A stretch of 64,000 nucleotides of DNA from Macrostomum lignano (Eukaryota): NCBI GenBank assembly GCA_002269645.1, contig NIVC01002722.1, positions 62,001 through 126,000 of the forward strand. Reading direction: 5' to 3'. The translations under genes were made by a program, and so were the position numbers. Shown piece by piece: positions 12,816 to 61,536 of the stretch; position 1 is the stretch's first letter, and each line of letters opens with the position of its first letter. Below the pieces are notes generated by a model. The model saw only the letters and a list, made by a program, of their open reading frames with translations, was not told the DNA's origin and made no database searches.

Positions 12816-13244
12816 ATATGCCTCACCCAATCCTCCCAAAAGCTCACAGAAACGCAATAAAAATAACCAACAGAAAAAACCACAGAATTCTGTGGAAAAA
12901 ACCGCGTGTTCAATTAATCAGGTTTCAATACTGGACATCTGTCTAACAATTCTCTTTACAACAGTACACATAGAAAGGCACAATATCAATTTACTTAGGC
13001 ATCAATTAAATGTAAGTCTTGAAAATAAAGTGTTAATAATATCTGACTAATATTTCATTTATTCATCTAAAGAACAGGGGTTTTGCTATACAAGTAGAAG
13101 ACATATAAAGCCTTGAAAAATCAATAATAATTTCTAAAAAGACTACACGATTGTCAGTAGGAACATCACGATATCAGAAATCTTCTGCTATCAAATGAGC
13201 AGCAGAATTTTAGTAACTCAGAAAGTCTCAAGGGAGACAGAAGA

Positions 13245-13915: not shown

Positions 13916-13950
13916 TAAGAGCAGAAGTTCAGTTCAATTAGTTCAAAGCA

Positions 13951-17468: not shown

Positions 17469-17679
17469 TAAAGAATGGAGAAGACAGCTCAGTTGTCTGC
17501 AAATGTTTTAGCTTGTAATTTTATAAGTTTATGTCATCATTTCTCTAAAATGTACTTCTTTACGACCACCATTCTACTCTTAAACACGACATCTAAAGTC
17601 TTCTTCTTGAGTTGATTCAACTTTAGATTTAATATAATCCATCATCAAAACTAGTCCTCTCAAATAGATCCTCTTCATA

Positions 17680-19060
17680 TTACATCTACTCTACCTCATT
17701 ACATCTGTTCTCGCGAATTAGATCTACTCTACTCCCATTTGATCCATTATCCTAAAAATGGTTTTCTATTCTTTAGAACTATATCTACTCTCCCCCATTA
17801 TATCTATTCTCCAGAATTATATCTACTCTACCCCATTATATCTATTCTCCAGAGTTATATCTACTCTCCCCCATTAGATCTATTCTCCAGAATTATATCT
17901 ACTTTACCCCATTAGATCTATTCTCCAGAATTATATCTACTCTGCCCCATTAGATCTATTCTCCAAAATTATATCTACTCTACCCCATTAGATCTGTTCT
18001 CCTGAATTATATCTACTCTGCCCAATTAGATCTATTCTCCAAAATTATATCTACTCTACCCCATTAGATCTATTCTCCAGAATTATATCTACTCTACCCT
18101 ATTAGATCCATTCTCCAGAATTAGATCTACTCTACCCATTAGATCTATTCTCCTGAATTATATCTACTCTGCCCTATTAGATCTATTCTCCAGAATTAGA
18201 TCTACTCTACCCCATTAGATCTGTTCTCCTGAATTATATCTACTCTCCCCCATTAGATCTATTCTCAAAAATTATATCTACTCTACCCCACTAGATCTAT
18301 TCTCCAAAATTATATCTACTCTCCCCATTAGATCTATTCTCCAAAATTATATCTACTCTAATCCATTAGATCTATTCTCCAAAATTATATCTACTCTCCC
18401 CCATTAGATCTATTCTCCAAAATTAGATCTACTCTACCCCATTAGATCTGTTCTCCTGAATTATATCTACTCTGCCCTATTAGATCTATTCTCCAGAATT
18501 AGATCTACTCTACCCCATTAGATCTGTTCTCCTGAATTATATCTACTCTCCCCCATTAGATCTATTCTCAAAAATTATATCTACTCTACCCCACTAGATC
18601 TATTCTCCAAAATTATATCTACTCTCCCCATTAGATCTATTCTCCAAAATTATATCTACTCTCTCCCATTAGATCTATTCTCCAAAATTATATCTACTCT
18701 GCCCCATTAGATCTATTCTCCAAAATTATATCTACTCTCCCCCATTAGATCTATTCTCCTGAATTAGATCTACTCTACCCCATTAGATCTGTTCTCCTGA
18801 ATTATATCTACTCTGCCCTATTAGATCTATTCTCCCGAATTAGATCTACTCTACCCCATTAGATCTGTTCTCCTGAATTATATCTACTCTCCCCCATTAG
18901 ATCTATTCTCAAAAATTATATCTACTCTACCCCATTAGATCTATTCTCCAAAAATAGATCTACTCTACCCCATTAGATCTATTCTCCAAAAATAGATCTA
19001 CTCTCCCCCATTAGTTCTATTCTCCCAAACTGGATCCACTCCACCTCCACTCCATTAAAT
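17680..19060. repeat. 38-bp minisatellite (ATTAGATCTATTCTCCAGAATTATATCTACTCTACCCC) between QTGAL and FMO
   Basis: Tandem units read directly; internal 19+19 substructure. Confidence 0.95.
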
Positions 19061-19438
19061 TAGATCGATTCTCCAGAGTCCACTAATTCATCTACTCTCA
19101 ACCTTTAGACATAGATCTAGTCTCCACAACTAGAATTTAGTCTCAATACGACTAAATCGCCGCCTCACTTTAAGTGTAAAACAAATAAAAGAGGTAAAAA
19201 ACGCAAAACTAGTTTTTCAGTACCGTACAGAACCTGTGCATTCTCTGTGGAGGATGGCTCATCGACTGCAATAAGACGCTTTTATTTTGATAAATTTAAA
19301 ACTTGCTATTATTAAATACTTGTTGTCTTTACAATAAAATAAAAACCTTACCAAGCACTTTGGCCAAGTCTACAGTAATTACAAGCATAAAGAGAAAAAC
19401 AGCTACATAAAATGCTACACCTACTACTTCTACTATAC

Positions 19439-22016
19439 TTAGCTAAACCAGTAGTAGTCAACGCCTTCAGTGAGTCCAAGAGAGTCTAAATTGGATTCCA
19501 GCTGACCTCCGGTGAGGTCCAACTTCGCGCAGATGATTAACGGCGGCTTAACTGTCGAGAAATGAACGATTGGAATGCGGGGCTTCGGCCGCTGCTGCAG
19601 TGGGTGGAGGCGGGCGGTGGAATTCAGGGAGAGTTCAAGGAGTGGCCTGAATGTTCAGTCTGAGGAGCAACTGAGGATCTGGGAGGCTGGTGGCCCAGCA
19701 ACTGAGGATCTGGGAGGCTGGTGGCTCAGCAACTGAGGATCTGGGAGGATGGTGGCCCAGCAACTGAGGATCTGGGAGGCTGGTGGCCCAGCAACTGAGG
19801 ATCTGGGAGGCTGGTGGCCCAGCAACTGAGGATCTGGGGGGCCGGTGGCCCAGCAACTGAGGATGTGGCAGAAGCACTCACTGAGCTCTCCTCAAAGGTG
19901 TAAAACCCAAGCTGAATCTTCTTAGGATCCACATCGCAGAAGGCCGCCACTTTCCGTCGAAGGTCGGGCGGCAGTGCTCGGTAGAACCTGCGGCCCTGCT
20001 TGCCCGCATTCCACACACTGAAGCTGGGCCACCCTGGCAACACCCTGGCAACAAGCCGATCCATGCGCAGACGGAATATTGCACTCCTGTAGTTGCGCGC
20101 GAAAAGCGCAGTGGTTAAGGGCGATTTTTACAGTGGCTCAGGGGCGATTCTCAGTGTGGTTCAGGGGCGATTCTCAGTGTGGTTCAGGGCGATTCTAAGT
20201 GTGGTTCAGGGGCGATTCTCAGTGTGGTTCAGGGGCGATTCTCAGTGTGGTTCAGGGGCGATTCTCAGTGTGGTTCAGGGGCGATTCTCAGTGTGGTTCA
20301 GGGGCGATTCTCAGTGTGGTTCAGGGCGATTCTAAGTGTGGTTCAGGGGCGATTCTCAGTGTGGTTCAGGGGCGATTTTCAGCGGTTCAGGGGCGATTCT
20401 CAGTGTGGTTCAGGGCGATTCTAAGTGTGGTTCAGGGGCGATTCTCAGTGTGGTTCAGGGCGATTCTCAGTGTGGTTCAGGGGCGATTCTCAGTGTGGTT
20501 TAGGTGTGATTCTCAGGGTGGTTTAGGTGCGATTCTCAGTGTGGTTTAGGGGCGATTCTCAGTGTGGTTCAGGGGCGATTCTCAGGGTGGCTTAGAGGCG
20601 ATTCTCAGGGTGGTTTAGGTGCGATTCTCAGGGTGGTTTAGGGGCGATTCTCAGGGTCATTTAGGGGCGATTCTCAGGGTCATTTAGGGGCGATTTTCAG
20701 GGTGGTTTAGAGGCGATTCTCAGTGTTGTTATCAATGCTGCACAATCAGAGCTCACTCGTGCACGGAGAATGTGGTGGCAGCTGGTTGGTATCTGTACAT
20801 GAGCAGATCGGCGTCAACTCTTGCCACACCACCGCCGCAGTCAAGATGCTTAAAGAAAAACTCCAAATCCTCCGGAAAGCCCCTGGCTGTAGACTGATTG
20901 AAGCCTCCCACACGATCAAATACCGATCGATGCATGAACCAAGTTGGCATGATCACGGTGGGTCCGTGAGAAGTGTACACCTGAGTCACCAGCTGCACAG
21001 GAGTCAGCTGATTGGCCCAGGCTGTGAATCGCGCTGTGGAACCGTCAGGCTTACGGTGAAACTGACTGCCGACAATCTTAGTGAATATTTTGGGGGGGGG
21101 CAATAAACGATTTTATAACATTTAAATTATCAATTAATATTTGAGCGACAAAAATAATTAATAACTATTGTTCTCTTTATACTGTACTAACAGTAGAAAT
21201 ATAAAACATTCTGGTAAAAAATACTAATATTGAATTTTAAATAACTACTCTACTTACAGTAGAAATATGGGAAAAATACGCTAAATAACAATACAAATAT
21301 TTATAGGATACTAGACAGGTCACACCCTTAGCTAATGACAGTATGTAAAAAAGAAAAGTAAAATAACTTCAGTAGACAGTAGCTCACAGCATGTTTGTTT
21401 TTCAGTGACACTGCTAGAGAAAGTTGTTCAGCAATCCGGTCAGGCAGCATGACATCATCCTGAAGATATTTACACAGATTATAAAATATCTTTATGTTTT
21501 ACACACAAAATACTTAAAATTCTGTAACACAAAGACCCACTTACAGCATCTAAAAAGCAGAGATATTCTCCAGAAGACTGAGCTACAGCACAATTTTTGG
21601 CATATCCACAGCCTCTTGCTTCACCATTGTGTCCAGATATGACAAAATTGTACACTTTTTGTGAAAATTCTTGTTTTAAATTGTTCAAGATGTTGGCGCT
21701 GCTATCCTAGTTTGTTTGTTAAAAAATTACATTGACAATAGATTAAATTATAAATTATATAATTACATATATATTATAAGATGTAATGACATAAAAAAAC
21801 TTACAGAACTAGCATCATTGTAGACAGAAATCTCTAAATTGCCAGAAAAGTTTTGATTGACAGTGGATTGAATGGCTTCACTAAGCCATGATTCAGCATT
21901 GTGAACTGGTATGATAACAGACTACAATGGATTAAAATTAATCTAATAAAACAATGTACTTTAGTATTATAAATATTAAATATTAACAATGCAAAGAATC
22001 TTACCACAAGGGCCAT
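19439..22016 (-). CDS. B3GNTL1: Queuosine-tRNA galactosyltransferase (QTGAL/B3GNTL1 orthologue, GT2); complement(join(19439..19594,19882..20086,20757..21076,21388..21459,21545..21706,21805..21921,22005..22016)), ~347 aa
   Basis: [94 protein letters not shown] match my recollection of human B3GNTL1. Six GT-AG introns with consistent phases. Confidence 0.92.
19665..19865. repeat. 31-bp minisatellite (GCAACTGAGGATCTGGGAGGCTGGTGGCCCA), QTGAL intron 6
   Basis: About 6 units read directly. Confidence 0.95.
20130..20725. repeat. 23-bp minisatellite (GGGGCGATTCTCAGTGTGGTTCA), QTGAL intron 5
   Basis: Tandem units read directly. Confidence 0.95.
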
Positions 22017-27500: not shown

Positions 27501-30500
27501 CAATGGCATTAATTTCTATACTTTTACTGCAAGCAACATATTATGCAAAAAATAGTACTTCATGCAAGTAAAACCAAGTGAAACAGAGCCTATGATTTTA
27601 TTTTCACTTTTGTTATAATCATTTTAATGAGATTTATGACAAAGTGATCATAGGACAAAAATAGGAGAGTATAATTTTGGCTCTTTGCTTATTGTGTGCC
27701 CCAAAGGGAGGCACTAGATTGCTAGTTTTTACTAATAATAAATGTCAATTAGTCATTTCATAGATAGGCCTAGTGTCTGATCAATATCAAAATAATAAAA
27801 ACTATGTCTATAGACTCATTTATAAATATTTAAGTCAATAAAATCTAATAATAATATATACTTTTTAATGCTTTTATATAGACATTACGAGTAACTGTGT
27901 TCTATAAAAAGATGGGATAGATAAAAATAAAAGAAGGTGCACATATCTTTAGCTACTTTAATACATTGGATGTGCTATAACTTTATGCTATGATTTCATA
28001 TTATGATCTAGTAAAATCAATCTTATATTAATATATGTAATTTTACTATTAACTTCAAGTGATTGTAGAACAAAATAGATATCTTCAGTTTGTCTGACAA
28101 TCAGCTTCATTCAATCATTTATATGGTAGTATAACAAAAGTGAATATATATGCTCTTTTAATAAAGATATAAGTCCCATCTAGTGTTCTGGAGGTTCATA
28201 TTTTGTTACACAAGCTCATATTTTTGGGGTTTTACTAATTTAATTGTATATGTATTTTTTATTTATTTAATCCAACCCCCCTCTCTCTTTGCTAACCTCA
28301 CCCCCACGTTAAATTATTAAATAAAAATGGCGTGATTTTGGTAAGCGTGCTTTTTGCTAAGTGGTTGCTTGTTTTGTTTGCCTGCGCAAGAATTCAGAAG
28401 TATTGAAGGCTACAAACATCTGATTATACTTAATTATTTTTTTGGTTTTTGAAGAGTTAGTCAATTTAATGTCTAGTATATGCTTTCTCAGTCATGCGCA
28501 ACCTTTGGATTCACTTGGCTGTTTCTATTGGCAACACACACATGTAAGTTGCTATTGGACCATACATGCGCAACCCCCTTGATTTACACTGGCCATGCAA
28601 CTTACTTTTTGACCAAAAATGCGACTTACCTGTGAAAGAAACCCTAACACAGTTTTGGGTAAACGGCAGGAGTAATTACGACTCTCTTATAAGGCCTAAA
28701 TGCCTCATCATCTAATTAGTACTAGGTCTGTATTCTTTAGGCTGGGCATTTTTGCGACTTACCCCTAGTCCACCACAATTTACGGTGGCCAGATCGGCCA
28801 GGTCGGCCAGCAGTTGCGTATGTATGCTATTGGACGGAATAGTAGTCATGTGACTGCTCTCAGCCAATAGCAACTTACATGTGTGTGTTGCCAATAGAAA
28901 CGGCCGGGTGAATCCCTAGGTTGTGCCCAAGCATGTGCTTTCTTAAACTCTAAATTAATTTTAATTATTTTTGGGATTGCATAAAAAAACACCTACTCTC
29001 ATATAGACAGGGGATAGGAGATAGGGGATTATGAGACAAAATACTATTACTGTTACTATTACAAAAATTAATTAAAAATAAAAACTAATGGACATTAATG
29101 CAAAATGATTTTGATAATTAATTTCTACTCAAAGATAAAGTAAATTTAAATGCTTAGAGATTTTTTTCTTTGTATGAGTATATAAGCCTAATGCATATAT
29201 TTTTTCTTGATAATCTAATGCCTAGATATTTTTGTCCATAGTATTAGCATTTTTTCTAATAGACATATGATTGTCCTTGCCTGTAGGATAAACTCTAATA
29301 AATTAAAATAAATTTTTATTTTATTCATTTGTTTAAAGACAACAAACAACTACAACAAAATATAGTAAATTAGTAAAAAGAGTGTCAGATGTCATGTCAA
29401 AGTGCTAATAAGTAGAAAAATCAACCTTTTCAAATAAAAGTTTTATAAATAATATACCACATAACTTAATATGTTTTGTTTCTTATATCATATAATATAT
29501 AATAAAACAATAGACCCTTAATTAGGACCCGATTCTTGAGTACTTGATTTAGAATTCTTAGTGCTCCAACTTTATATAGCTTAAATATCAAAACTTTTTA
29601 TAGCAGAAAATGATCAAACTGGTAGGCAACTTTTCACAAATATTAGAAAACAAAAGGTAGCAGACTAAATGTAGTCATTTTTACCTTTTTTGAATATCTA
29701 CAAGTATTATTTTACAATCTGTTATATATGCAACTATTTTTACAAAGATCTTGCTCAACCCTTATGTTCACCCTTAGCCAGTATCAATATTACCAAGTTA
29801 ATATTGCCAATTTAAAATCCAAATCCAATCCAAACAAGTAAAATAATCAGTTTGAAATCATAATATCAATTACTTCAAACTTTTAAGGTGGTTGCTGTGG
29901 CGACCAGAGTGTCCGTCGCATCATTGGAGGCTGGGGCTGGGCTTGGTGGCTTGTAACACAAACTCAGAAGTGAGTAATTAGTTATTGTTAAACTTGATAA
30001 TATATTAATGTAGTGGGTCCAGCGCGTTTGTCTATAATTTTTTGTTTATTTTTTCAGACTAACTTTGGAGGTGTTCACACTGAAGCCGCGCTGTGAGAGT
30101 GTTGAAACCTCCGAGGGTGTAGCTCTGACAGTGACAGGTATGATATTGATTTATTTTATTCATTTTTCTGGAGTTGGGAGTGATAAGATTTAAACTGGAA
30201 GTGACGTATGGAAAATGGGATATTTTAGTGGGGATGTAGAGAGGGGAAAATACAGAAGGGATGTAGAGAGGTGAGACCCCATAGGGAGTGTAGAGAGGAG
30301 AGAACCCAGAGGGGTGTAGAGAGGGGAGAACCCATAGGGAGTGTAGAGAGGTGAGAACCTAGAGGGGTGTAGAGAGGGGAGAACCCATAGGGAGTGTAGA
30401 GAGGTGAGAACCCAGAGGGGTGTAGAGAGGGGAGAACCCATAGGGAGTGTAGAGAGGTGAGAACCTAGAGGGGTGTAGAGAGGGGAGAACCCATAGGGAG

Positions 30501-33500
30501 TGTAGAGAGGTGAGAACCCAGAGGGGTGTAGAGAGGGGAGAACCCATAGGGAGTGTAGAGAGGTGAGAACCCAGAGGGGTGTAGAGAGGGGAGAACCCAT
30601 AGGGAGTGTAGAGAGGTGAGAACCTAGAGGGGTGTAGAGAGGGGAGAACCCATAGGGAGTGTAGAGAGGTGAGAACCCAGAGGGGTGTAGAGAGGGGAGA
30701 ACCCATAGGGAGTGTAGAGAGGTGAGAACCCAGAGGGGTGTAGAGAGGGGAGAACCCATAGGGAGTGTAGAGAGGTGAGAACCCAGAGGGGTGTAGAGAG
30801 GGGAGAACCCATAGGGAGTGTAGAGAGGTGAGAACCTAGAGGGGTGTAGAGAGGGGAGAACCCATAGGGAGTGTAGAGAGGTGAGAACCCAGAGGGGTGT
30901 AGAGAGGGGAGAACCCATAGGGAGTGTAGAGAGGTGAGAACCCAGAGGGGTGTAGAGAGGGGAGAACCCATAGGGAGTGTAGAGAGGGGAGAACCCATAG
31001 GGAGTGTAGAGAGGTGAGAACCCAGAGGGGTGTAGAGAGGGGAGAACCCATAGGGAGTGTAGAGAGGTGAGAACCCAGAGGGGTGTAGAGAGGGGAGAAC
31101 CCAGAGGGAATGTAGAGGGGGAAGAACCCAGGGGGATGTAGAGAGGGGAGAACCCAGAGGGAATGTAGAGGGGGAAGAACCCAGGGGGAATGTAAAGAGG
31201 GGAGACCCAGAGGGAATGTAGAGGGGGAAGAACCCAGGGGGATGTAGAGAGGGGAGAACCCAGAGGGGTGTAGAGAGGGGAGAACCCAGAGGGGTGTAGA
31301 GAGGGGAGAACTCAGAGGGGTGTAGAGAGGGGAGAACCCAGAGGGGATGTAGAGAGGGGAAAGTTCTGGGTGATGTTAAAAGCAGCGAGTCGACAGTAGA
31401 TGACACGAATGGCATCCCTTTAATCAAAGGCGTCGCCCAAGTGAAGGTGATGCGAGATGATGAGATTCTGGCCACCGCCTGCGAGCAGTTTCTGGGCAAG
31501 TCGCGCCAAGAGATGGAGGAGACAATCCTGCAGACCATGGAGGGCCATCTGCGCGCCATCCTGGGCACCCTGACTGTCGAGGCCATCTACAAAGATCGTG
31601 ACCAATTCGCTGAACTTGTCCGCGAAGTGGCCGCACCGGATGTAGGCAAAATGGGCATCGAAATTCTGTCCTTCACCATCAAGGACATCTACGACAAGGT
31701 GGACTATCTAAACAGCCTCGGCCGCACGCAGACTGCCGTTATCAAGAGAGACGCCGATATTGGCGTGGCCGAAGCCGAGAGAGACGCCGGCATTGTTGAA
31801 TCGTCCTGCCAGCGAGCCAGAATGGATGTCAAGTACGACATGGACTCGAAAATTGCCGACAGTGCCAGGACCTTCCAGATGCAGAAGGGCGCTTTCGATG
31901 TGGAAGTGAATAGGGCCAAGGCCGAGTCCGAGCTGGCCTATAATCTCCAGGGTGCCAAGGAGAGGCAGAAGATCCGAGCTGAGGAAATCGAAATTGAGGT
32001 GAGATAATCTAATGCTTTGTGGGTGGAAAACAGGGTGTGAAGAGGATAACAGGGGAGGGTGAGAAGAGGGTAACAGGGGAGGGTGAAAAGAGATAATAGG
32101 GGAGGGTGAGAATAGGGTAACAGGGGATGGTGAGAAGAGGGTAACAGGGGAGGGTGAGAATAGGGTAACAGGGGAGGGTGAGAATAGGGTAACAGAAGAG
32201 GGTGAGAAGAGGGTAACAGGGGAGGGTGAGAAGGGGATAACAGGGGATGGTGAGAAGAGGGTAACAGGGGATGGTGAGAAGAGGGTAACAGGGGATGGTG
32301 AGAAGAGGGTAACAGGGGAGGGTTAGAAGAGGGTAACAGGGGAGGGTGAGAAGAGGATAACAGGGGATGGTGAGAAGGGGATAACAGGGGCTGGTGAGAA
32401 GAGGGTAACAGGGGATGGTGAGAAGAGGGTAACAGGGGAGGGTTAGAAGAGGGTAACAGGGGAGGGTTAGAAGAGGGTAACACGGGAGGGTTAGAAGAGG
32501 GTAACAGGGGAGGGTTAGAAGAGGGTAACAGGGGAGGGTTAGAAGAGGGTAACAGGGGAGGGTTAGAAGAGGGTAACAGAGGAGGGTGAAAAGGGTAACA
32601 GGGGAGGGTGAAAAATGGGTAACAGGATAGAGTTAGAAGAGGGTAACAGGGGAGGGTGAAAAGGGTAACAGGGGAGGGTGAAAAATGGGTAACAGGATAG
32701 AGTTAGAAGAGGGTAACAGGGGAGGGTGAGATGAGGTTAACAGGGGAGGGAGAGGGTAACAGATGATTTGCTCTGTTGTTATTTCAAGTGATAGTTAAGA
32801 TTAAAAAGTTAAATTTACTAATTTGATTTCAAATTGCTGCAGGTTCTGTCTCACTTTGTGTGTTAGAAACAGAGATAGTCAAATAAATCAATCCTGAGTT
32901 TGCGCACCCCTTCTCATTCACAGCGAACAGCAGAATTCAGACAGTGCTCAATGCGTATTGACTGTATATTTAAGATAAGGCGAGAACCTTTATAGATTTA
33001 CAACTAGCTAGGTACTCGCATATCAGTGTGCAGCAATTACGTTCGTCTATTTTTTTGTTTTCTGAACTTGAAACATTTAATTTGATCTTTTTGCCATTAG
33101 TAAAGGTCAAGTAAGGTCAAATGAATATTATTTATGTACTGCATTGACAAAAAACTTAATAATATAGTACGTTACACTGTCTATTTGTATCGAAAACAAG
33201 TTTAATAATTACCACGCCGATATGTATCGAAAAAATCATTAATCATCACTTCACCGCCTATATGTATAAAAATTGGTTTCTTAATTACCCTGCCGAAATG
33301 TATTGAAAGCAGGTTTAATAAGTATCCCGCCGATATGTATCGAAGGCAGGTTTAATAATTATCCTGCCGATATGTATCGAAAGCAGGTTTAATAATTATC
33401 CCGTCGATATTTATCGAAAGCAGGTTTAATAAATATCCCGCCGATATGTATTGAAAGCAAGTTTAATAATTAACCTGCCGATATGTATCGAAAACTGGTT

Positions 33501-34220
33501 TAATAAAGTATCCCGTAGATATGTATCGAAAGCAGGTTTTTTTATAATTCTCCCGCCGATATGTATCGAAAGCAGGTTTAACAAATATCCCGCCCATATG
33601 TATTGAAAGCAAGTTTAATAATTAACCTACCGATATGTATCGAAAACTGGTTTTTTTAATTATTGCGCCGATATGTATCGATACAAATAAAATAAGTGGC
33701 ACCTCCACTACCCTGGCAGGTTCGCGAGAAGCGCAAGCTGATTGAAATCGAAGAGAAAGAAATCATTCGCAACGAGAAGGAGCTTGACGCCAACGTTCGC
33801 CGCCCTGCCGAGGCGCAGGCCTTCAAAGTGCAGACCATCGCGGCCGGTGACCGGTTCCGCAAAGTGAAGGTGGCCCAGGCCGAGGCTGAGTCCATCCGAG
33901 TGCGCGGCTCAGCCGAGGCCGCCAGCATCGAGGCGGTTGGCAAGGCCCAGGCAGAGGAGATGCGACTCAAGGCCTCGGCTTTCCGAGCCTACGGCGACGC
34001 CGCCATCTTGGAGCTGACACTGGACGCTCTGCCGCGCGTTGCTGCCGAGGTGGCCGCGCCGCTGTCCAAGATTGACGAGATTGTTGTGCTGGGCGACGAT
34101 CGAACCACGTCTGAGGTGTCGCGCCTGCTGAGCAGCCTGCCGCCAGCTGTGCAGGCCCTGACGGGAGTTGATCTGTCCAAAGCCCTTGGCAAACTGCCAG
34201 GAGCCACGGCCACCGCTTAG
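24544..34220 (+). CDS. FLOT2: Flotillin-2 (reggie-1); join(24544..24592,29888..29969,30058..30137,31430..31998,33720..34220), ~426 aa
   Basis: MGNIHTVGPNEALVISG-GCCG...GGWGWAWW, SPFH core EGHLRAILGTLTVEAIYKDRDQF, EAEA coiled coil, ALTGVDLSK. Four GT-AG introns with consistent phases. Confidence 0.95.
25502..26172. mobile_element. Non-autonomous DNA transposon (671 bp) in FLOT2 intron 1
   Basis: 17-bp TIR CCCTATTGGAATAAGTT; 8-bp TSD GATTTTTT at 25494-501 and 26173-80; GC/CpG-rich interior in AT-rich context. Confidence 0.8.
28495..28930. mobile_element. MITE-like element with ~60-bp TIRs; diverged internal-only copy at ~27260-27460
   Basis: GTTTCTATTGGCAACACACACATGTAAGTTGCTATTGG at ~28530 and its reverse complement at ~28863-28900. 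Interior resembles 27260-27460. Confidence 0.65.
30255..31365. repeat. 53-bp (26+27) G/A-rich minisatellite, FLOT2 intron 3
   Basis: AGAACCCAGAGGGGTGTAGAGAGGGG / AGAACCCATAGGGAGTGTAGAGAGGTG units alternate. Confidence 0.95.
32035..32760. repeat. 24-bp G-rich minisatellite (GGGTAACAGGGGAGGGTGAGAAGA), FLOT2 intron 4
   Basis: Tandem units read directly. Confidence 0.95.
33175..33680. repeat. ~37-38-bp minisatellite (CCGCCGATATGTATCGAAAGCAGGTTTAATAATTATC), FLOT2 intron 4
   Basis: Tandem degenerate units, each with the quasi-palindrome CGATATGTATCG. Confidence 0.9.
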
Positions 34221-35525: not shown

Positions 35526-38500
35526 TTAAATTAGGAATAGGAAACGTGCGTTGTATATAAAACTAAAATTGAACCCTCATTTTCTTAACGAAAAGCTCTT
35601 TAAATATCAATCTATAAAGATTAAATTTGCCTCCTATCAAAAGCAATAGCAGTTTTTGTGCTGCAAAAATGGAAACCTATTATCTCCCGTAATGTATTCT
35701 TCGGTAAAAACCTGCCTTTTTTAAATTTCTCCAAGAAACATAGCTTCCCGTCCTTCGTGAGTTGTCCTTGGTGTTGCCTGCACATGGGTCGACACGGACA
35801 CTGAATAAATTCCTACGTGCCTCAGGATAGTAGACTCACCTATGATAGAAAATCACCAGGATAGTAGACTCTTCTATGAATGAGTTTTAACTCGACAAAG
35901 TTTTAAGTGCATCAGGAAAGCAATCACGGATATCTCTGACGCAAACAGCTCGATACAAAAAGAAGATCGTTGCATCAACTGGCCAAACCAAGCAGACTTA
36001 ATTGGCTCATCAAGATTAAGACAAGATCAAAAAGACACAAAATATTTATTGACGCCCGTTGGGAGAGGTGTACGCCTATCAACATTATAAAACTCTCAGT
36101 TTTGTAAATGAATCTTAATTTTACAATGAACAATTTACAAGGATGAAAAACTTGAAAAAGTTCCAAAATGTGGCTTACTTCTCAACAACACGTTAATTCT
36201 AATAACGTTAGAATTTTTACGTCAAGGGTCCTGAGAATTAACAGAAGTTCAAATTCAAATCTGCTTAAGCGTGGTTTCTTTCAGAACGTATTTAATTATA
36301 AATTGCAACAGGGTTTCAAGCCTAAAATGGTAATCTAAAAGCCCGCTTATTATTCTGGTTGGTTACTATATAATAGTATATTGCTCTTTCTCGTCTGTGA
36401 GCACGTTACATAAAGTTCTTTGTTCATTGGTTAATAATCATAGAGTTGTGTACATAAAGTTATTATTGATGAGAAATAAGAAGTTATTGTTAGGTGTGCA
36501 TAAAGCAGGTTAATTATTATTTCTTTTTTAGCAAACCGGCTTGAGCCAGCGGAGGGGTCGACACCACCTGAGCTGCACCCCAGCAAAACTTATTTACTAA
36601 TCTTCTATCATGCGTGCATTGAAATTATTTTTTCATCGAATATTGTTATTTTCTCTTGTCAATCCAGTTTAAGTACTGTAACAGATCGTTTATCGGTAGC
36701 TAGTCTCTGAAGGCCTCTCACACCAACTACCTTACACGCCTGCTACCCCTCTGCCACGACAGACAGAAGCTTCGAAGAACTGAGACAAGTCCTTTCTTAG
36801 GTTTGAGCTCAAACTTTACTAAACTCGGCAGTGGAGAGCCTCGGCTTTTCCAATTGCATTGTATTTATAATGCTCGGCATTGTGCTCGGGGGCATGCAGT
36901 GTTGGGGTGGTCGCGTGATATTTTTCCGCCCCACCCATCTTATTTTCTTGTTTGCATGGTTAGCTAGTTTGATGAATTAACACAGAGAGGGCACGCATGG
37001 TCTGCGTGGCTGTTTTAGTGCAGGCAAATGGGTGGGTTTATCATTAATTATCTTGATAAGTTTGTAATAGCATATCAGCGTTTTGAACGCTGATAAGTAC
37101 CAAGTAAATTTCTTGAATATACCTCGGAAATAGAGACCATCAGCGAGTCTGCCGAGACAGCTCCCATGCACAACTCGATCGCCCTGACAGCTGTGCCAGC
37201 AGGCGGAGCTCTCCGATTCAAATGAAGCAAGTTTGTGTTTTTTCTGTGCTTGGTAAATATAGAGGGGCAAGGGTAACGGAGAGGTATACCAGCCAGTTCA
37301 GTTAATTATTCTAAATAAAGTTTTTACCTGCTGTACAGAGACTTGTCTCAAATCTCTAAGAGCGAATGGCCGCATAGAGGTGGGCAGCTGGGTACTAACC
37401 GCCTTTCTTGCAGCCTTTTTAGTAGACCATTCTTCCTTTAGCACTGACAGCCCCTCGACACCCAGCCCATTACGCTTGCGTTCTGAAACTGCTAGCCTGG
37501 CTTCTCAGTGTAAGTTTTTCTTTGCTTTTTGTTAGTCTGATAGAATTCAGAAATGTTAACGGCACAATAAAAAATCGATCTCGTTCCGGTGTCCATTAGT
37601 CGCCTGATGCCATCTTTTGAAGGTGCCGACGGCGTCGGGTGATGAAGGGATGCTTGAGAGACCAGCTGAGGATGTCCAGCAGTTGAGGTTTGCCCACTGT
37701 TGAGGCTTGATCAGTGAAACTGAAGAAATTAGCAACGGGGTGTCATCTGACGCCGCCTTGCACACCGGTCTTGTGGCTATTTCTACAGTTGACTGTCCCA
37801 ACTGTGGACTGAACTTCAACTGGGCAAGCTGTTCCTGTGGGAGTAGTCTGAGGATTTCAGCCGTTTCAGGGCCTTTGTACGTATTTGTCTTTAAAGGAGT
37901 ATGTAAGGAAGGCTCTCCTACAATTCTAGCTTAAAAACCATTGCATTTTACATTATAATGGGGTACCTTCATTTTCATAAATAACCATTACATATACGAG
38001 TAATGTTTTAAATAGCTATTAAAAGTGATGCTTGGGTTGTAAATATCTCACGCTCGTAATGGCAAAAAAGATAAACAGAGGGTTGAGCATGGGTAAAGCT
38101 AGTTGAGTCATGCTTACGTTGCGTTTTTATTTTTCCACAAATTTCTAGAGCTGCATATACTATACATACTATACAACTTACTACATACAACATACATTGC
38201 TCCTATTGTACTGCTTGTTCAATTTATGCACAGTGATTGTTGTTGTTGCCACGTAGTTTTCTAAAATATGAGAGGCTGAGTGGTTTTCTAACAATAACAT
38301 TGTTGATTCTTAAACTATTTGAGAAAGCAATTTTACTAAAACTTCATGACGGTTCGATCGAAGATACTGTAAATTCGAGAAAAAATGGGTTGCGGAAAGA
38401 ACGAAAATTAATGGATAAATGGGTGAATCGACTAGATAATTTTTGTAGATCAAGCATTTTATTTTCCGTCTAACTTTATAGAATCAAGGCTAAAATTAGA

Positions 38501-38831
38501 AAAAACGTTGGCACTAAGCAGAGTTTGGATGATGCAGGAGCATCTTCTGCAGGAAATGTCTAAATTCCATACGCTCTAATGGTCCAGCAGGACTCTCATG
38601 CTTCCGGTAGACAGCAGTCTGACCTTTTGACTTGCCAAAAATTACACCTTAAGTTAAAAGAGAGCAAGCCAGAAAAAAGTATACCGCCAATGCTCATGTA
38701 CCTGCTTTTAACAAATTTCATTCTCAGCTAAACATACCGACTTTCTAGAATATGAAGTGAGAAGCTGACGATTCGGTCCACTAATTGAAACAAAGGCACT
38801 AAAGCTGAAACAAGTGTAGCTTTAAGCAGCA

Positions 38832-41800
38832 ATGAATCTGCTCCCGGAGCTGAAGAGCGCCGCCATGGACGGCAGAGTCGGCAAGGTGCGGCAGTTTCTA
38901 CGGAGCAGCGTCAGTCCGGACGTCGCTGACGACCGGCAGCGGACGGCGCTGCACTGGGCAGCCGAGCGAGGCCAGTCCAGGGTGGCGAGGCTTCTCATCG
39001 AGGCCGGAGCTCAGCTGGACGCTCAGGACAGCAGCGGGGCGACCGCTCTGCACCTGGCCTCGATGCACGGTCACCGGGATGCGGTCCGGCTGCTGCTCGA
39101 GTCCGAGGCCAACACCAGCCTGGTGACGAAGTCCAGCTCCTCGGCGCTGCACCTCGCCTCGCGGAACGGCCACCTCGAAGTCGTGCAGCTGCTGAGCCGG
39201 CAGGCCGACTGCGATCAGCAGCTCGCAGACGGAGACTCGCCGGTGCACCTGGCTGCTCCGCTCGGGCAGCAGCTCGTGCTCGCTGCTTTGCTGCTGGCAG
39301 CCGCGGATCCGAGCGCCAGGAATGCGCGCGGCCAGACCCCGCTGCACTCCGCGGCTCTCCACGGCCAGCGGGCCGCCATTGAGCTGCTCGTCCGGGCGGG
39401 AGTCGCCGCCGACTCGCTGGCAAGCGATGGGTCGACGCCGCTGCACGCCGCGGCAGCAATGGGGCACGAGGCCACCGCCCAGACTCTGCTGCAGCTCGGC
39501 TGCGGGCTCGTCGACCTCAACAAGAACGGGCTCAGCCCCGCTGCCATCGCCTGTCGCTTCGGGCATCGCGAGGTCTTGCATCTGCTGCTCAAGCAAGTGA
39601 CTCACGCCAGAGAGCTCGGAATCCGGCACGAAGAAACCAACGAAAGGCTGCAGCGATTCAAGAATTCGCTTGTTCCTGCAGCTCAGTCTCGCGGAACGTT
39701 TTTGCACGAAGAGCGGTAAGCGTTTGTGATGTCAGTAATGAAACGGTCTAAACGTATGTTACATAAGTACAGAATAAGGATATTTTGTTGCCAACTGATA
39801 TCTCGACAGCTTGATATGTACCTGATATTCGAAACATCCCTCTTGCTAGTAACACATCTCACAATCATCCGTTAACACTATTAATTATTGTACCTTGCAT
39901 CTGGAATCGTGGCTCTAGGCTACTTGGTGTGACGAAGTTGTAGGCCTACTTTTCTTTTGCTAATGTTGATGAGTTGTATAGCGGTCTATCAGGATTTACA
40001 ACTTTAACATGTATGAATAAGTAGTAGTAAACTTGGCGAATTACAGGGAGCTGTCGAAATACTGTTGAACACGAGTATATTTATCTATTAAGTATTAGGG
40101 CCAGCACAAAGCCAAGAGCGACGAGCGACAAAACCAGACCACCAGCTTGGAGGCGAAATTCAAAACGTTTTTATAGTAATTTGAAATTGGAGTATAAAGA
40201 TTTAAACAAAAGAGAGTAAACTTAATCTGCTTAACGTGTCAAACAATACGTACAGATGTACAGTTAAATAGAATAATAAAATACCGATAATTACTTTGTA
40301 AAGACTTTCACAACGACGGCGGCACATGAAACGATCTACAAAAGCTCAAACCGTCACATTGGATTTATTTTTGTTTCAACCTTTCTGAATACTGCATGGT
40401 TTGATTTGGCAGTCTGTGACGTACGCAGTCACGGTAAGCTTTATTACGTACTTCGATTTAAATATATTCAAATCATGCTTGCGTTGACAAAGATTGTATT
40501 GCCCTTGAAAACCATTCATTCAAGCTCCTCTCACGGCCAACTGACGTACATACGGTGGGTCCCGTATGTCTAAGTAGTGATATAAGTGAAGTAGTGATTT
40601 AGTATCATTCGTACTCAATATCAATATTTCACTGCAAATCCCTATATTTAGTCACTTGGTCTGTTTCTAATACAGTTCCAAAATTGTATTACTTTCATTA
40701 TTGATAATTAATTGCCAATGATATGCAGCTGACAGAACCACTGTAACTCAACAAAACTTTCAGTGAGCAGCCCGACTCAAACAGCCTGCGCGAGGTCCTC
40801 ATCGATATGGATGCTGTGGCAGATGAACCAGACGAGCACAAGAGCGCTCAGCTGCACATAGCCCTGAAGGAGTCCGGGTTTGAGCTGAATCGTGTGAAAC
40901 TGCAATCCGCATGTTCTGATGTCCTGCAGCGCATCACTAGAAACCGCCTCGACGCTCAGGAGTACAATGACTGCGAAGTGTACATCGTCGGGAGCTTCAG
41001 TGAAGGCTGGTCCAACAGTCTGGTTCGGTTGGATGGCCAAACCGACGCAGACTCCGACATCGACGTCTGCTTCGTTGCGAGAGGGATGCTCTTTCATCTC
41101 AAAGGCAGCTGCAGCTGCATCAACTGCAGATTCGATGAAGAACGACATAGGGCAGTTGAATATGAAGACGGGCACATTAAGTGGCCTGGATCGCGTAAGA
41201 GGATATTGGCTGGAATCTGTGATTTTCATTTTCACTTGTGTACCCTCATTTGCATCATTTTACCAAAAGCATCATTTTCCTAAAAGCTCACCCACTAACA
41301 ATTTCGCCCCAAACAGCCTCGAATCCGTCGCAGACCTGGGCCGGGTCGGAGGTCAGACCGGCAGTGGATCTTGTGTGGGCGTTCCGCTGCTGTTGCTATC
41401 CAAAACTGGAAGTGCTGCAGCCAGGATACAGTACTCACATTGCGCCATCAGTGCTGCAGAGCCTGAGGCAGGAGATGCTGGAGTCTCCATGTCACCTGGT
41501 GGCAGCGGCTCCCCCCAGCAAGGACGGGCAGCAGCTGAGGATCAGCACCACCTTCCTGGAACGAAGGCTGCTCAGAAGCCTCACAACTGAGCAGGGACAC
41601 GTGTTCGTGCTTATCAAGTTTATCATTAAGAAAGTGATTTCAGCTCGAGTTAATGGACTCAAGACCTACATAGCCAAGAGTCTGATGTTTTACCTGCTGG
41701 ATGAGACGCCTGCTACTCACTGGCAGTCCGAAAACCTCATCAGTCTGGCGAAAGGAGCACTTTCGATTCTGTTGCGGTGTCTGCTGGACAAGGGTATTTC

Positions 41801-43330
41801 AGATGCGGACAAGTGCATGAAGCACTTCTTCATGAGAGATGCCTGGGTGTACTTAAAGAAGCGCCACAGTGGAAAGAAGCTGATTTCAGATGTTGTGAAG
41901 GACATCATCGAAAAGCTGTCAGAAGTTGTGTCGTGTTTTTACGAAACGCTGCGACCACTGGAGGATGCGAAAAACTTTAGCTTTCATCCGTTCCTGGTGC
42001 TGCCAGTTTTGATTCCGAGGCCAGTTCCGATGGCATCAAACCTGCAGTTCCACGATGTGTATGACGCGATCCGGTCCATTCTGCTGAACTTGGCTCATGA
42101 AGAGTGCCGCGAAGAAGACAAAAAGGTCATGATGAAGCTGGCTCGCAGAGTTCCTAACTACGCTGCATGTCCGAAGCACTGCCTCTTCGCGCTGATCTAC
42201 TTGAAATTCGAAATGCGCTACGCGGCGCGAAGGGTCTTGCGCTCGTTCCGCTATCAACAGGTCAGCCGAGGACTGTCACACTGGAAGGTGCGCGCCACTG
42301 ACGCAGAGTCTGAGTTGGCGGTGTGGCAGCACCTGGAAAGATCCAGTTCGGTTTGGAAGCTCCTGATTCAATCCGACAAGCCGCCCGTTCTGTCGTTTTT
42401 GCCGGACAAATTCAGGCAGCATTTTTCACTGAGCTGTGGCCAGTTTGACTGGTACTACGTGAACTTTGACGCGCTGCTGAAAGCCCTCAGCCTCTATCTG
42501 GATCACGATATGGGACTTGAACTGTGGTTTGAAGAAACTCTCCGCTGTGCGAGTCCAGACGTTCAGGAGCTGCTTGTAACTCTTGAGCTTTGTGGGGATA
42601 GCGACCTGCTTGTCCAACTGGTTCAGAGACACAGGCGAGCCATTTGCGACCACCAGGGCACGAGAGAGAAGGTCGAGCAGCTGATGCAGGAGTCGGTAAG
42701 TCAGACTGGTCATTGCAATACCTTTATAACAATTATTAAAAATGAAAAAAGCTAGAGGCCACATCAATTATTGCTCATGAGTGATTTCCGATTCTCTTGC
42801 AGCAGTCCCTGGCTGAAAGGAGCTTCCGAAGGACAGCGCGAGCGTTGCCTGGGGCAGAAAGCACTGATGAGGACCAGCTGTTTCTAGGCCGGGGAAGAGA
42901 CCGACCCGTAAGGTTCATCCTTGTTAAGCTATTCATCTGCCTTTGCAGCCTGTCGCCCCTGGTCTTCTTAGCGCAGAAGTCCCGGCGCTACGGATTTTCC
43001 ATTGGCAAGGAGTGCCTGGTGGCAGCCGTTCGCAAGCATCTCGCTCGCCGCGTCAGAGGAAGCGTTCTGGGCCGGTACTCGTCTGCTAGAAACATTATGA
43101 TTGGCAATTGCGTCTTGTTTGTCTTCCTTGGAACCTATGTGCTCATCTGTTCAAGTAGCTACTCCCATCACAAAACCTGGCTGTCGACTTTAATTTTTTT
43201 GATTTTTATTACTGCATGCTTAATAATTCTCATTTGTACCTGCGGAATTTCCTGTATAACGCACCGGGCTGCGTCAAATATGGTTAACCACACAGTTGCA
43301 AGTGCTGAAGTGACTCATGCAGAGACGTAA
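38832..43330 (+). CDS. Ankyrin-repeat / Mab-21 (cGAS-like, cGLR) nucleotidyltransferase / C-terminal hydrophobic-tail fusion; join(38832..39715,40764..41194,41317..42695,42803..43330), ~1073 aa
   Basis: Exon 1 has ~7 ANK repeats (TALHWAA, TALHLAS, TPLHSAA...). Exon 2 has IVGSFSEG...SDIDV. Exon 3 has VDLV, ISTTFLERRLL, LKTYIAKSLMF and KHFF. Donors/acceptors 39716/40763 (phase 2), 41195/41316 (phase 1, branch CACTAAC) and 42696/42802 (phase 0) all keep frame. Confidence 0.8.
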
Positions 43331-44076
43331 GCTCTTACGAACTTGAGTTAAAAACTGACGCTTCTAGCGTTCTTAAATGCGTTCGATTAAACTTCCACAG
43401 ACATGTCGTAACCTCCTGACTTGCCCCGCCAACGGAATTTTTACTGCGCTAAATTTTTATTTTAATTAACATATGTTTCTGTCTGAAGTTTTTTCACTTA
43501 GGTTCTGGGATTTGTTTGCTCATAACTTTGTCTGTGTTTCATTTTATCTATTGTTATAATCGCAGATTGTTATCTGTGTTTAATTTCTGTTATAATCGCT
43601 GTTGTTCAATTCAGTTCAATTCAGTATCAATTCAAACAGTTAATTTGGTTATTAGTTATCTGTAGGAATGCGAGCTGGTCAGTCAGCCACTGCTAATTAT
43701 CCAGCCCCATACTGATCATTTGCCCGCTTTGCCCTCCCCGCCCGCTCAGCCTCGTGAATCCGCCGTCCCCTCACAGGCCCGCAGCTGTTCAGTTGTTGCT
43801 GAGGTCACAAGTTCGAGTCCCTTCACCGCCGTCCCAGCTGGACAAATTTGAGTCCAGTATATGACTGTACTGCGACTAATGATCAAAAACAATGGCTAAT
43901 AAACTACGTGCTCGTAGTAGACTACTAAACTGTCAATAATATTTAGAGGCACTTGTTATTATGCGTGACAATCAAGCAGTTCACTTATAGCGTCAAGCAG
44001 TAAAACTGAATAATGTATTTGGAGCTTTCAAAGTTAATTTATTTTCGAAATTCGAGTTTACCGCACTGTTTTAATA

Positions 44077-61536
<17,460 letters not shown>

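What the first reader, a model, noticed from the sequence alone, without database searches (positions are those of the whole stretch)
38832..43330. Ankyrin + cGAS-like nucleotidyltransferase + membrane tail in one polypeptide
Seen: the separate ANK, NTase and hydrophobic ORFs join through three canonical introns with matching phases (2, 1, 0) into one ~1073-aa frame. The NTase keeps GS(FSEG), DID and the downstream VDLV aspartate. Known: Mab-21-family cGLRs (cGAS, Drosophila cGLR1/2) make cyclic dinucleotides that activate STING. Inference: ANK repeats could act as a protein-sensing or autoinhibitory module on a catalytically competent, membrane-anchored cGLR.
Basis: partly seen in the sequence, partly recalled or inferred. 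Interest (0 to 1): 0.85.

Follow-up and report, generated by a model that had tools for sequence, protein, structure and literature searches.

The report
Flatworm ankyrin–cGAS-like receptor gene
This is a real, already annotated gene of the flatworm Macrostomum lignano, one of a large expansion in that species of ankyrin-repeat-fused cGAS-like immune enzymes that has already been catalogued; its only unreported feature is a hydrophobic tail that may tie it to a membrane.

Summary
Exons 38832-39715, 40764-41194, 41317-42695 and 42803-43330 (+) join through three GTAAG...CAG introns (phases 2, 1, 0) into an open 1073-aa frame. That protein is letter-for-letter GenBank PAA55664.1 (Macrostomum lignano, RNA-seq-based annotation).

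It has about 7-8 ankyrin repeats (Pfam E 1e-43), then a divergent Mab-21/cGLR nucleotidyltransferase. An AlphaFold model of a 97%-identical copy matches only cGAS, cGLR, MB21D2 and MAB21L1 structures. G371-S372, D393/D395 and D456 align with human cGAS G212-S213, E225/D227 and D319.

Next comes a roughly 250-aa family-specific domain with no structural match, then three hydrophobic segments.

Li et al. 2023 already listed ankyrin-fused cGLRs, including M. lignano relatives of this gene. They cloned five of their NTase domains, and none is flagged among the 15 active enzymes.

The membrane tail rests on hydropathy. Only the first segment is conserved in paralogues, and the last 53 codons show a composition shift. 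Catalysis, ligand, product and a STING partner are untested.

Verdict: an uncharacterised member of a known kind, of moderate-to-low interest.

The parts
38832..39715 (+). Exon 1: start codon, about 7-8 ankyrin repeats (residues ~5-262) and the start of the linker. GC 0.68, GC3 0.82-0.92.
   Evidence: Pfam Ank_2 E 1.4e-43 and Ank E 2.6e-37, 6 stretches. TALH/TPLH motifs recur at 33-residue spacing. Composition.
39716..40763 (+). Intron 1, 1048 nt, phase 2, GTAAGC...CAG.
   Evidence: The junction peptide HEER|EQPDS is present in PAA55664.1 and in P0001. Paralogue P0020 has a phase-2 intron in the same linker.
40764..41194 (+). Exon 2: acidic linker and the N-terminal half of the NTase core. Carries G371-S372 (40990-40995), D393-I-D395 (41056-41064) and a Cys/His-rich insert, HLKGSCSCINC (41095-41127).
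   Evidence: G-S and S-D-x-D are invariant in 15 paralogues. They align with cGAS G212-S213 and E225/D227.
41195..41316 (+). Intron 2, 122 nt, phase 1, GTAAGA...CAG.
   Evidence: The position and phase are conserved in paralogue locus L001.
41317..41966 (+). Exon 3, first part: the rest of the NTase core with the third acidic residue D456 (PAVDLV, 41358-41375), the LRISTTFLE motif (41535-41561), and the Mab-21 C-terminal helical lobe with KTYIAK (41661-41678).
   Evidence: Pfam Mab-21_C scores 20.4 bits, E 5.9e-4, below the 24.1-bit cut-off. 12 of 15 paralogues hit Mab-21_C. The family profile against PDB finds only cGAS/cGLR. Foldseek gives the same result.
41967..42695 (+). Exon 3, second part: a family-specific alpha/beta domain of about 243 aa (residues 656-898; motifs FHPF, LPDCAR-like VPNYAAC, DSAWKF-like SSVWKL, NFDALL).
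   Evidence: Conserved in paralogues. AF2 pLDDT 80, pTM 0.82. No PDB fold match, best E 0.9. No PDB sequence match.
42696..42802 (+). Intron 3, 107 nt, phase 0, GTAAGT...CAG.
   Evidence: The junction peptide LMQES|QSLAERS is present in PAA55664.1, P0001 and P0035.
42803..43330 (+). Exon 4: basic tail (pI 9.9) with hydrophobic segments H1 (936-955; 42914-42973), H2 (996-1014; 43094-43150) and H3 (1024-1050; 43178-43258). A very basic loop (42974-43093) lies between H1 and H2. Stop TAA at 43328-43330.
   Evidence: Kyte-Doolittle peaks of 2.4, 2.3 and 3.0. H1 plus the basic loop is 82% identical in P0035 and 43% in P0002/P0003. H2-H3 are seen only in this gene. GC3 falls to 0.39 in the last 53 codons.

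Best explanation
Shown: window 38832-43330 (+) is one four-exon gene of Macrostomum lignano (GenBank PAA55664.1, BOX15_Mlig031018g1). It encodes, from N to C terminus:
- about 7-8 ankyrin repeats;
- an acidic linker;
- a divergent cGAS-like receptor (Mab-21 family) nucleotidyltransferase with the full G-S / D-x-D / D active-site signature;
- a domain of about 250 aa found only in this family;
- a basic tail with three hydrophobic segments.

It belongs to a very large ANK-cGLR expansion seen so far only in M. lignano.

Inferred mechanism, by analogy with characterised cGLRs: the protein is a cytosolic innate-immune sensor. It is held inactive until a ligand is bound. Two Mg2+/Mn2+ ions held by D393, D395 and D456 then drive synthesis of a nucleotide second messenger, most likely a cyclic dinucleotide.

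The near-neutral NTase domain (pI 7.2 against 9.1 for human cGAS) and the appended ankyrin array suggest a ligand or regulator bound through the repeats or the extra C-terminal domain, rather than bare nucleic acid on a basic surface.

The tail probably attaches the protein to an internal membrane with all globular parts in the cytosol. There is no signal peptide, and the strongly basic loop after H1 should stay cytosolic. A H2-H3 hairpin anchor is therefore the most likely topology.
For: Gene model:
- The spliced frame is open with canonical introns.
- It is identical to PAA55664.1, with the same gene span.
- That annotation derives from RNA-seq transcript assembly.
- Intron position and phase are shared with a paralogue.

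Ankyrin: Pfam E 1e-43.

cGLR fold and family:
- The AF2 model of the 97%-identical copy has pLDDT 86.6 and pTM 0.87.
- The Foldseek top 50 are all cGAS, Cv-cGLR1, Sp-cGLR1, MB21D2 or MAB21L1, with E from 3e-7 and target TM 0.43-0.56.
- The family profile against PDB hits only cGAS/cGLR, E 1e-4.
- The profile reaches bona fide Pfam Mab-21 + Mab-21_C proteins of annelids and bivalves at E 1e-14 to 1e-24.

Active site:
- G-S and S-D-x-D are invariant, and the third Asp is kept in 13 of 15 paralogues.
- These columns align with human cGAS G212-S213, E225/D227 and D319. RISTTFLE aligns with RLSFSHIE. The cGAS sequence used is identical to row 1 of Table S3.

Literature: family members are classed as ANK-fused cGLRs with predicted active sites.

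Tail: hydropathy, H1 conservation, and an open frame unlikely by chance.

pI values.
Against: - No activity data exist for this protein. Five NTase domains of the same family were cloned for the Li et al. screen, and their 'Note' fields are blank, so they are not among the 15 active enzymes.
- The Pfam NTase-core model PF03281 does not hit any of 15 family members, and Mab-21_C is below the cut-off for this protein.
- The catalytic residues were aligned by sequence and by secondary-structure position only. No coordinates were available to superpose.
- Li et al. state that most platyhelminths lack immune cGLRs. M. lignano is absent from their table of cGLR and STING gene counts per species. STING in M. 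lignano was not tested here.
- H2 and H3 have no counterpart in any other protein model, and GC3 drops to 0.39 there.
- Older models of near-identical copies (P0001, P0166) end at GRGRDR, just before H1.
- Most paralogues have no hydrophobic tail.
Confidence: 0.6

Rival explanations
1. It is a non-enzymatic Mab-21-fold scaffold. The NTase fold binds a nucleotide or partner protein but makes no messenger, as in MAB21L1 or the mitochondrial-membrane adaptors MiD49/MiD51. The ankyrin repeats and the tail make it a membrane-bound adaptor.
For: The five family NTase domains screened by Li et al. are not flagged as active. MAB21L1 and MB21D2 are among the Foldseek matches. The Pfam NTase-core model does not hit. 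Membrane-anchored Mab-21 proteins exist (my own knowledge: MiD49/51, TMEM102, ITPRIP).
Against: G-S and S-D-x-D are invariant, and the third Asp is nearly so, across paralogues that are only 32-44% identical. That pattern is hard to explain without catalysis. Li et al. say Mab21L1/2/3 lack a predicted functional active site. Inactivity in vitro is common for cGLRs whose ligand is unknown (Limitations section).
Confidence: 0.2
2. The hydrophobic tail is not a functional membrane anchor. H2-H3 would be a recent stop-loss or read-through extension into former 3'-UTR-like sequence, or the usual transcript would end or splice before H1. The working protein would then be soluble, like most paralogues.
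For: GC3 is 0.39 in the last 53 codons against 0.55-0.92 elsewhere. No other protein carries H2-H3. P0001 and P0166 end at GRGRDR, immediately before H1, and a GTAAGG lies at 42908-42913. Most paralogues lack any such segment.
Against: The RNA-seq-based GenBank model includes the whole tail. The distal frame is open in only 0.9% of shuffles, while the other five frames carry 4-7 stops. H1 plus the basic loop is conserved at 82% and 43% identity in two paralogue lineages.
Confidence: 0.25
3. The enzyme is active but not a cyclic-dinucleotide/STING sensor. It could make linear 2'-5' or 3'-5' oligonucleotides like OAS, or another nucleotide signal read by a receptor other than STING.
For: STING was not found or sought in this genome. 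Li et al. report that most flatworms lack immune cGLRs and have lost other receptor families such as TLRs. cGLRs with unidentified products are reported (legend of Fig 1D). The family is very divergent from tested cGLRs, at 12-16% identity.
Against: The structural neighbours are cGAS and cGLRs rather than OAS. The most frequent cGLR product is 2'3'-cGAMP.
Confidence: 0.12
4. The ankyrin, NTase and tail ORFs belong to separate genes that were wrongly merged.
For: Many M. lignano models in the databases are visibly merged: P0035 is 3379 aa, P0046 carries a Delta-like part and P0102 a Pecanex part.
Against: The introns are canonical with matching phases. The GenBank model is transcript-derived. 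More than 20 paralogues carry ANK + NTase in one model, from two independent annotations. Intron position and phase are conserved. There is no in-frame start or stop structure that would suggest separate genes.
Confidence: 0.03

Closest known systems
Ankyrin-repeat-fused cGLRs catalogued by Li et al. 2023 (PMC9980059), including M. lignano PAA86972.1, PAA45980.1, PAA68676.1, PAA58690.1, PAA67649.1 and PAA68216.1
   Same: Same architecture of N-terminal ANK followed by a cGLR NTase, same species and same paralogue family. For example, PAA57558.1 is the P0019 sequence, 37% identical to the window protein. Same GSxxEGW...SDxD signature.
   Different: PAA55664.1 itself was not found in the held, partly truncated, supplement tables. 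The hydrophobic tail and the extra C-terminal domain are not discussed there. No member has a reported ligand or product.
cGAS and characterised invertebrate cGLRs (Cv-cGLR1 8GJW, Sp-cGLR1 8GJY, Drosophila cGLR1)
   Same: Bilobal Mab-21 NTase fold (Foldseek E 3e-7 to 4e-5). The catalytic G-S, [DE]x[DE] and D columns and the R-x-S-x-x-x-E and Y-H/I-x-K motifs align.
   Different: Only 12-16% identity. There is a 9-residue insertion between G-S and D-x-D, and a Cys/His-rich insert in the N-lobe in place of the cGAS zinc thumb. The pI is near neutral, 7.2 against 9.1. It also has the ANK array, the extra 250-aa domain and the hydrophobic tail. cGAS and these cGLRs are soluble and stand-alone.
Lophotrochozoan Mab-21/cGLR proteins of 600-1500 aa, some TPR-fused (e.g. 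Lamellibrachia KAI0227343.1, Sinanodonta KAL3855470.1)
   Same: These are the nearest non-Macrostomum relatives, at profile E 1e-18 to 1e-24. They share GSxxEG...SDxD, W-P after the third Asp, WRxS..E and SYHxK. They also carry repeat-domain fusions.
   Different: They pass the Pfam Mab-21 and Mab-21_C thresholds, whereas this family does not for the NTase core. Their repeats are C-terminal TPR rather than N-terminal ANK. The Macrostomum C-terminal domain is not matched in them (matched stretches end near profile position 330-400).
MiD49/MiD51 (MIEF2/MIEF1), membrane-anchored Mab-21-fold adaptors (comparison from my own knowledge, not tested here)
   Same: A Mab-21-type NTase fold tethered to an organelle membrane by a hydrophobic segment.
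   Different: Their anchor is N-terminal and single-pass, they lack the catalytic acidic triad, and they have no ANK. They were not among the top 50 structural matches.

Membership tests
Mab-21 / cGAS-like receptor (cGLR) family | Sequence match to the Pfam Mab-21 C-terminal (HhH/H2TH-like) domain PF20266 above the gathering score | tested here: inconclusive
   The window protein scores 20.4 bits, E 5.9e-4, below the cut-off of 24.1. 12 of 15 paralogues match at E<=0.01, best 7.7e-10. Several database paralogues carry a precomputed PF20266 hit.
Mab-21 / cGAS-like receptor (cGLR) family | Sequence match to the Pfam Mab-21 nucleotidyltransferase core PF03281 | tested here: not met
   There is no hit for the window protein or for any of 15 paralogues. 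The link is indirect: the family profile reaches PF03281-positive proteins at E 1e-14 to 1e-24.
Mab-21 / cGAS-like receptor (cGLR) family | Bilobal cGAS-like NTase fold | tested here: met
All top 50 Foldseek matches are cGAS, cGLR, MB21D2 or MAB21L1, E from 3.4e-7, target TM 0.43-0.56.
Mab-21 / cGAS-like receptor (cGLR) family | Active-site signature: hG[GS], then [DE]h[DE] on the next strand, then a third acidic residue | tested here: met
   G371-S372, D393-I-D395 and D456 align with cGAS G212-S213, E225-F-D227 and D319. They are invariant or near-invariant in paralogues and lie on predicted strands. Spatial superposition was not possible because no coordinates were returned.
Mab-21 / cGAS-like receptor (cGLR) family | Ligand-dependent synthesis of a nucleotide second messenger | not testable with these tools
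   This needs biochemistry. The five family NTase domains cloned for the published screen are not flagged as active.
cGLR-STING pathway | A STING (or other) receptor for the product encoded in the same genome | not tested
   M. lignano is absent from Li et al. Table S5. No paper in the library addresses it. A word-index protein search with human STING was judged unable to give an interpretable negative.
Ankyrin-repeat proteins | Tandem 33-residue ANK repeats | tested here: met
   Ank_2 E 1.4e-43, Ank E 2.6e-37 with 6 stretches, residues 9 to about 250. T/SxLH motifs occur at residues 38, 71, 104, 169 and 202.
Integral or tail-anchored membrane protein | One or more hydrophobic helices of about 19 residues or more that span the bilayer | tested here: inconclusive
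   Three Kyte-Doolittle peaks of 2.3-3.0 over 19-27 residues. No dedicated TM predictor or experiment was available. The very basic loop after H1 conflicts with a simple three-pass topology. Only H1 is conserved.
MiD49/MiD51-type inactive membrane Mab-21 adaptors | N-terminal anchor and loss of the catalytic acidic residues | tested here: not met
   The hydrophobic segments are C-terminal and the acidic triad is intact.

The most novel reading that the evidence does not exclude
This would be a membrane-tethered cGLR whose activity is gated by its ankyrin array and/or by the fold-orphan C-terminal domain, through a non-nucleic-acid ligand such as a pathogen or host protein at a membrane surface. 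It would sit in a flatworm lineage with more than 80 diverged paralogues, in a phylum otherwise reported to have lost immune cGLRs. Its product would signal through a receptor other than canonical STING.
Probability: 0.1. Interest if true: 0.75.

Novelty: new member of a known kind. Interest (0 to 1): 0.3.

Why it matters
No cGLR fused to ankyrin repeats has a known ligand or product. M. lignano is a transgenic, RNAi-amenable flatworm with a very large ANK-cGLR expansion, in a phylum mostly reported to lack immune cGLRs. A member with a plausible membrane anchor and an intact active site is a reasonable entry point for three questions: what repeat-fused cGLRs sense, whether the repeats autoinhibit, and what reads the signal in flatworms. 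The gene, its architecture class and its family are already public, so it adds a candidate rather than a concept.

Tried and rejected
I used the 97%-identical paralogue segment P0001 296-909 instead.
- Single-sequence phmmer of the NTase part against PDB found nothing relevant.
- hhalign of the family profile against human cGAS aligned only the C-lobe, probability 11%. The N-lobe correspondence came from a 25-sequence MAFFT alignment that bridges through lophotrochozoan Mab-21 proteins.
- A database search with the exon-4 tail gave no hit.
- P0035, the paralogue with the best tail match, has no contig on record, so no synonymous/non-synonymous test of the tail was possible.
- Hydrophobic segments in P0046, P0102 and P0107 looked like further tails. 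P0046 and P0102 turned out to belong to merged neighbours, a Delta-like and a Pecanex_C protein. P0107 was not looked up.
- The C-terminal domain alone gave no fold or sequence match.
- A tandem paralogue within the window was sought and not found.
- The splice search for paralogue P0013 returned no solution within my shift limits.
- A search for STING in M. lignano was considered and left out. The word-index search with a human query could not give an interpretable negative.
- A merged-gene artefact was considered and rejected.
Full report
**1. The observation**

I read 38400-43800 and joined the four proposed exons: 38832-39715, 40764-41194, 41317-42695 and 42803-43330. Together they give 3222 nt with no internal stop, encoding 1073 aa and ending in TAA.

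All three introns are GTAAG...CAG. A 19-residue Kyte-Doolittle scan finds three strongly hydrophobic stretches, all in exon 4. By residue count they are 936-955, 996-1014 and 1024-1050.

**2. It is an annotated, transcript-supported gene**

An exact-sequence look-up shows that the 1073-aa model is already public. It is GenBank PAA55664.1, 'hypothetical protein BOX15_Mlig031018g1 [Macrostomum lignano]', UniProt A0A267E408. A script confirmed the identity.

The encoding contig is NIVC01002722.1 of assembly GCA_002269645.1. The called gene spans 4499 nt, exactly window 38832-43330, and the locus DNA is identical to window 28832-53330.

The paper describing that assembly states that the GenBank annotation comes from a genome-guided RNA-seq transcriptome (StringTie/TACO, boundary trimming with trans-splicing and poly(A) evidence, TransDecoder) (PMC5730564). 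I could not inspect the reads themselves.

Independent support comes from paralogues. More than 20 M. lignano proteins from two different annotations carry ANK and the NTase region in one model. In paralogue locus L001 (P0020), the intron inside the NTase core sits at the homologous alignment column with the same phase 1 (GHVELAEYS|ESHP against GHIKWPGS|PSNP). The ANK-NTase linker there also has a phase-2 intron.

**3. What the protein is made of**

*(a) Ankyrin repeats, residues ~5-262.* Pfam Ank_2 scores E 1.4e-43 and Ank E 2.6e-37 with six stretches. T/SxLH motifs recur at 33-residue spacing. This gives about seven to eight repeats.

*(b) cGAS-like nucleotidyltransferase, residues ~331-655.* Sequence evidence alone is weak:
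- Pfam Mab-21_C scores 20.4 bits, below its 24.1 cut-off. The NTase-core model PF03281 does not hit.
- phmmer against PDB finds nothing.

A profile of 15 paralogue NTase regions (A2) does better:
- Against PDB it finds only cGAS and a cGLR, E 1e-4 to 9e-4.
- Against 1.84 billion representative proteins it finds 1108 proteins at E<=1e-3 and 85 at E<=1e-30.
- Every strong hit I looked up that carries an organism name is from M. lignano (8 of the 10 looked up). The first outsiders are an annelid (Lamellibrachia, E 4e-24) and a bivalve (Sinanodonta).
- Ten of the weaker hits all pass Pfam's thresholds for both Mab-21 and Mab-21_C, and two also carry weak TPR matches.

Structure evidence is clear. 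An AlphaFold2 model of the 97%-identical copy (P0001 296-909) has pLDDT 86.6 and pTM 0.87. The 50 best Foldseek matches in PDB are all cGAS, Cv-cGLR1, Sp-cGLR1, MB21D2 or MAB21L1, with E from 3.4e-7 and target-normalised TM 0.43-0.56.

The active site aligns with human cGAS in a 25-sequence alignment that bridges through the lophotrochozoan proteins:

| Window protein | Human cGAS |
|---|---|
| G371-S372 | G212-S213 |
| D393 / D395 | E225 / D227 |
| D456 | D319 |
| LRISTTFLE | WRLSFSHIE |
| KTYIAK | SSYHVK |

It is identical to row 1 of Li et al.'s Table S3.

Across paralogues that are only 32-44% identical, G-S and S-D-x-D are invariant. The third Asp is kept in 13 of 15. In the model these residues lie where the Pol-beta-type fold puts them: G-S after strand 1, D-x-D at the start of strand 2, and the third Asp on a later strand. 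I could not superpose coordinates, because none were returned.

It folds confidently on its own, with pLDDT 80 and pTM 0.82. It has no structural match (best Foldseek E 0.9) and no sequence match in PDB. The profile matches to non-Macrostomum proteins stop before it.

*(d) The tail, residues 899-1073.* It is basic (pI 9.9) and holds the three hydrophobic segments.

**4. How solid is the membrane tail?**

For:
- The transcript-based model includes it.
- Whole exon 4 stays open in 0.035% of shuffles, and its last 83 codons in 0.9%. The other five frames carry 4-7 stops there.
- H1 plus the following basic stretch is 82% identical in P0035 and 43% identical in P0002/P0003, with the hydrophobic character kept.

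Against:
- H2 and H3 have no counterpart in any other protein.
- GC3 falls to 0.39 in the last 53 codons, against 0.55-0.92 elsewhere.
- Two older models of near-identical copies end at GRGRDR, directly before H1. A GTAAGG sits at 42908.
- Most paralogues have no such segment. Two of the apparent further examples belong to merged neighbouring genes.

Topology is inference only. There is no N-terminal signal sequence. The loop after H1 has eleven Lys/Arg against one acidic residue, so it should stay cytosolic. That argues against a plain three-pass topology. It favours a H2-H3 hairpin anchor, with H1 peripheral or re-entrant. I had no TM predictor.

**5. What is already known**

Li et al. 2023 (PMC9980059) surveyed about 3000 cGLRs. 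They report:
- 87% are stand-alone, but some carry TPR or ankyrin modules and some are tandem cGLR fusions.
- 'Most platyhelminthes' have only Mab21-like proteins.

Their domain table lists Ank_2 domains in M. lignano PAA58690.1, PAA67649.1, PAA68676.1, PAA86972.1, PAA45980.1 and PAA68216.1.

Their construct table lists five M. lignano NTase domains, rows 89-93, cloned for the screen. They have the same GSFxEGW...SDxD signature, and row 91 is the P0019 sequence.

The 'Note' column of that table marks the 15 active enzymes. It is blank for rows 89-93. The paper itself cautions that many cGLRs look inactive for want of their ligand.

PAA55664.1 itself was not found in the held supplement files, two of which are truncated. 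I found no paper describing a cGLR with a transmembrane segment.

**6. Most likely function**

Shown: one gene, with ANK, a cGLR fold with an intact catalytic signature, an orphan domain and a hydrophobic tail.

Inferred: a cytosolic, probably membrane-attached pattern-recognition enzyme that makes a nucleotide second messenger when activated.

The NTase region has pI 7.2 against 9.1 for the human cGAS catalytic domain. Li et al. associate high pI with nucleic-acid-sensing cGLRs. This weakly favours a ligand or regulator bound through the ANK array or the C-terminal domain.

Rivals, with my probabilities:
- Non-enzymatic Mab-21 scaffold: 0.2.
- Tail not a functional anchor: 0.25, for that part only.
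- Active, but with a non-cyclic-dinucleotide product or a non-STING receptor: 0.12.
- Merged-gene artefact: 0.03.

**7. Verdict**

This is an uncharacterised member of a known kind. The hydrophobic tail and the orphan C-terminal domain are the only features not described before, and the tail rests on hydropathy alone. Interest 0.3.

Noticed in passing
window 38832-39715 (exon 1) compared with 40764-42695: The ankyrin exon has GC 0.68 and GC3 0.82-0.92, while the NTase exons have GC3 0.55-0.75. It is 96-100% identical to paralogue models P0003 and P0001. The NTase and C-terminal domains of P0002/P0003 are only 60-65% identical. The ANK exon looks homogenised between paralogues, perhaps by gene conversion with GC bias, while the enzyme part diverges.
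   Followed up: partly
window 41967-42695 (residues 656-898): A conserved domain of about 243 aa follows the Mab-21 domain. It is confidently predicted (pLDDT 80, pTM 0.82) but has no fold or sequence match in PDB and is not matched outside M. lignano.
   Followed up: yes
window 41095-41180 (residues ~406-434): A Cys/His-rich insert lies between strand 2 and the next strand of the NTase N-lobe (FHLKGSCSCINC...EDGH). The H...C.C...H pattern is kept in most paralogues, so it may be a zinc site, in a different place from the cGAS zinc thumb. The nearly invariant CCYP and PCH motifs lie nearby.
   Followed up: no
window 43172-43330 and 42908-42913: GC3 drops to 0.39 in the last 53 codons. A GTAAGG lies within exon 4 just before the first hydrophobic segment. 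Older models of near-identical copies (P0001, P0166) end exactly there, at GRGRDR. An alternative 3' end or a soluble isoform is possible.
   Followed up: partly
protein P0004 (1346 aa) and P0006: Some family models carry two NTase units with ankyrin repeats between them. These are either true tandem-cGLR proteins, as reported for other animals, or merged tandem genes.
   Followed up: no
family as a whole: The profile finds 85 clusters (at 50% identity) with E<=1e-30 and 240 with E<=1e-10. Every strong hit looked up that carries an organism name is M. lignano. This is a very large expansion, known so far only from this species, in a phylum said to have mostly lost immune cGLRs.
   Followed up: partly
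window <28832-34220 (+) and 44077->53330 (-): The annotated neighbours are a flotillin gene (Band_7, Flot) upstream, and downstream on the opposite strand a 1569-aa gene with a faint F5/8 type C (discoidin) match. No second cGLR lies in the window.
   Followed up: partly
window 8867-9667 (-) and 13951-14670 (-): ORFs with FAD-dependent oxidoreductase (DAO, E 3e-17) and flavin monooxygenase-like (E 2e-10) matches, probably exons of other genes.
   Followed up: no
window 2704-3260, 9635-20730, 30231-33681, 46537-48609, 60177-60733: The window has many minisatellite arrays (periods 20-62 nt, up to 65 copies), a 1.5-kb (CTGT)n and a 0.56-kb (TCTA)n. These explain the strong strand skews. A block at 22-30 kb has GC 0.31.
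   Followed up: no
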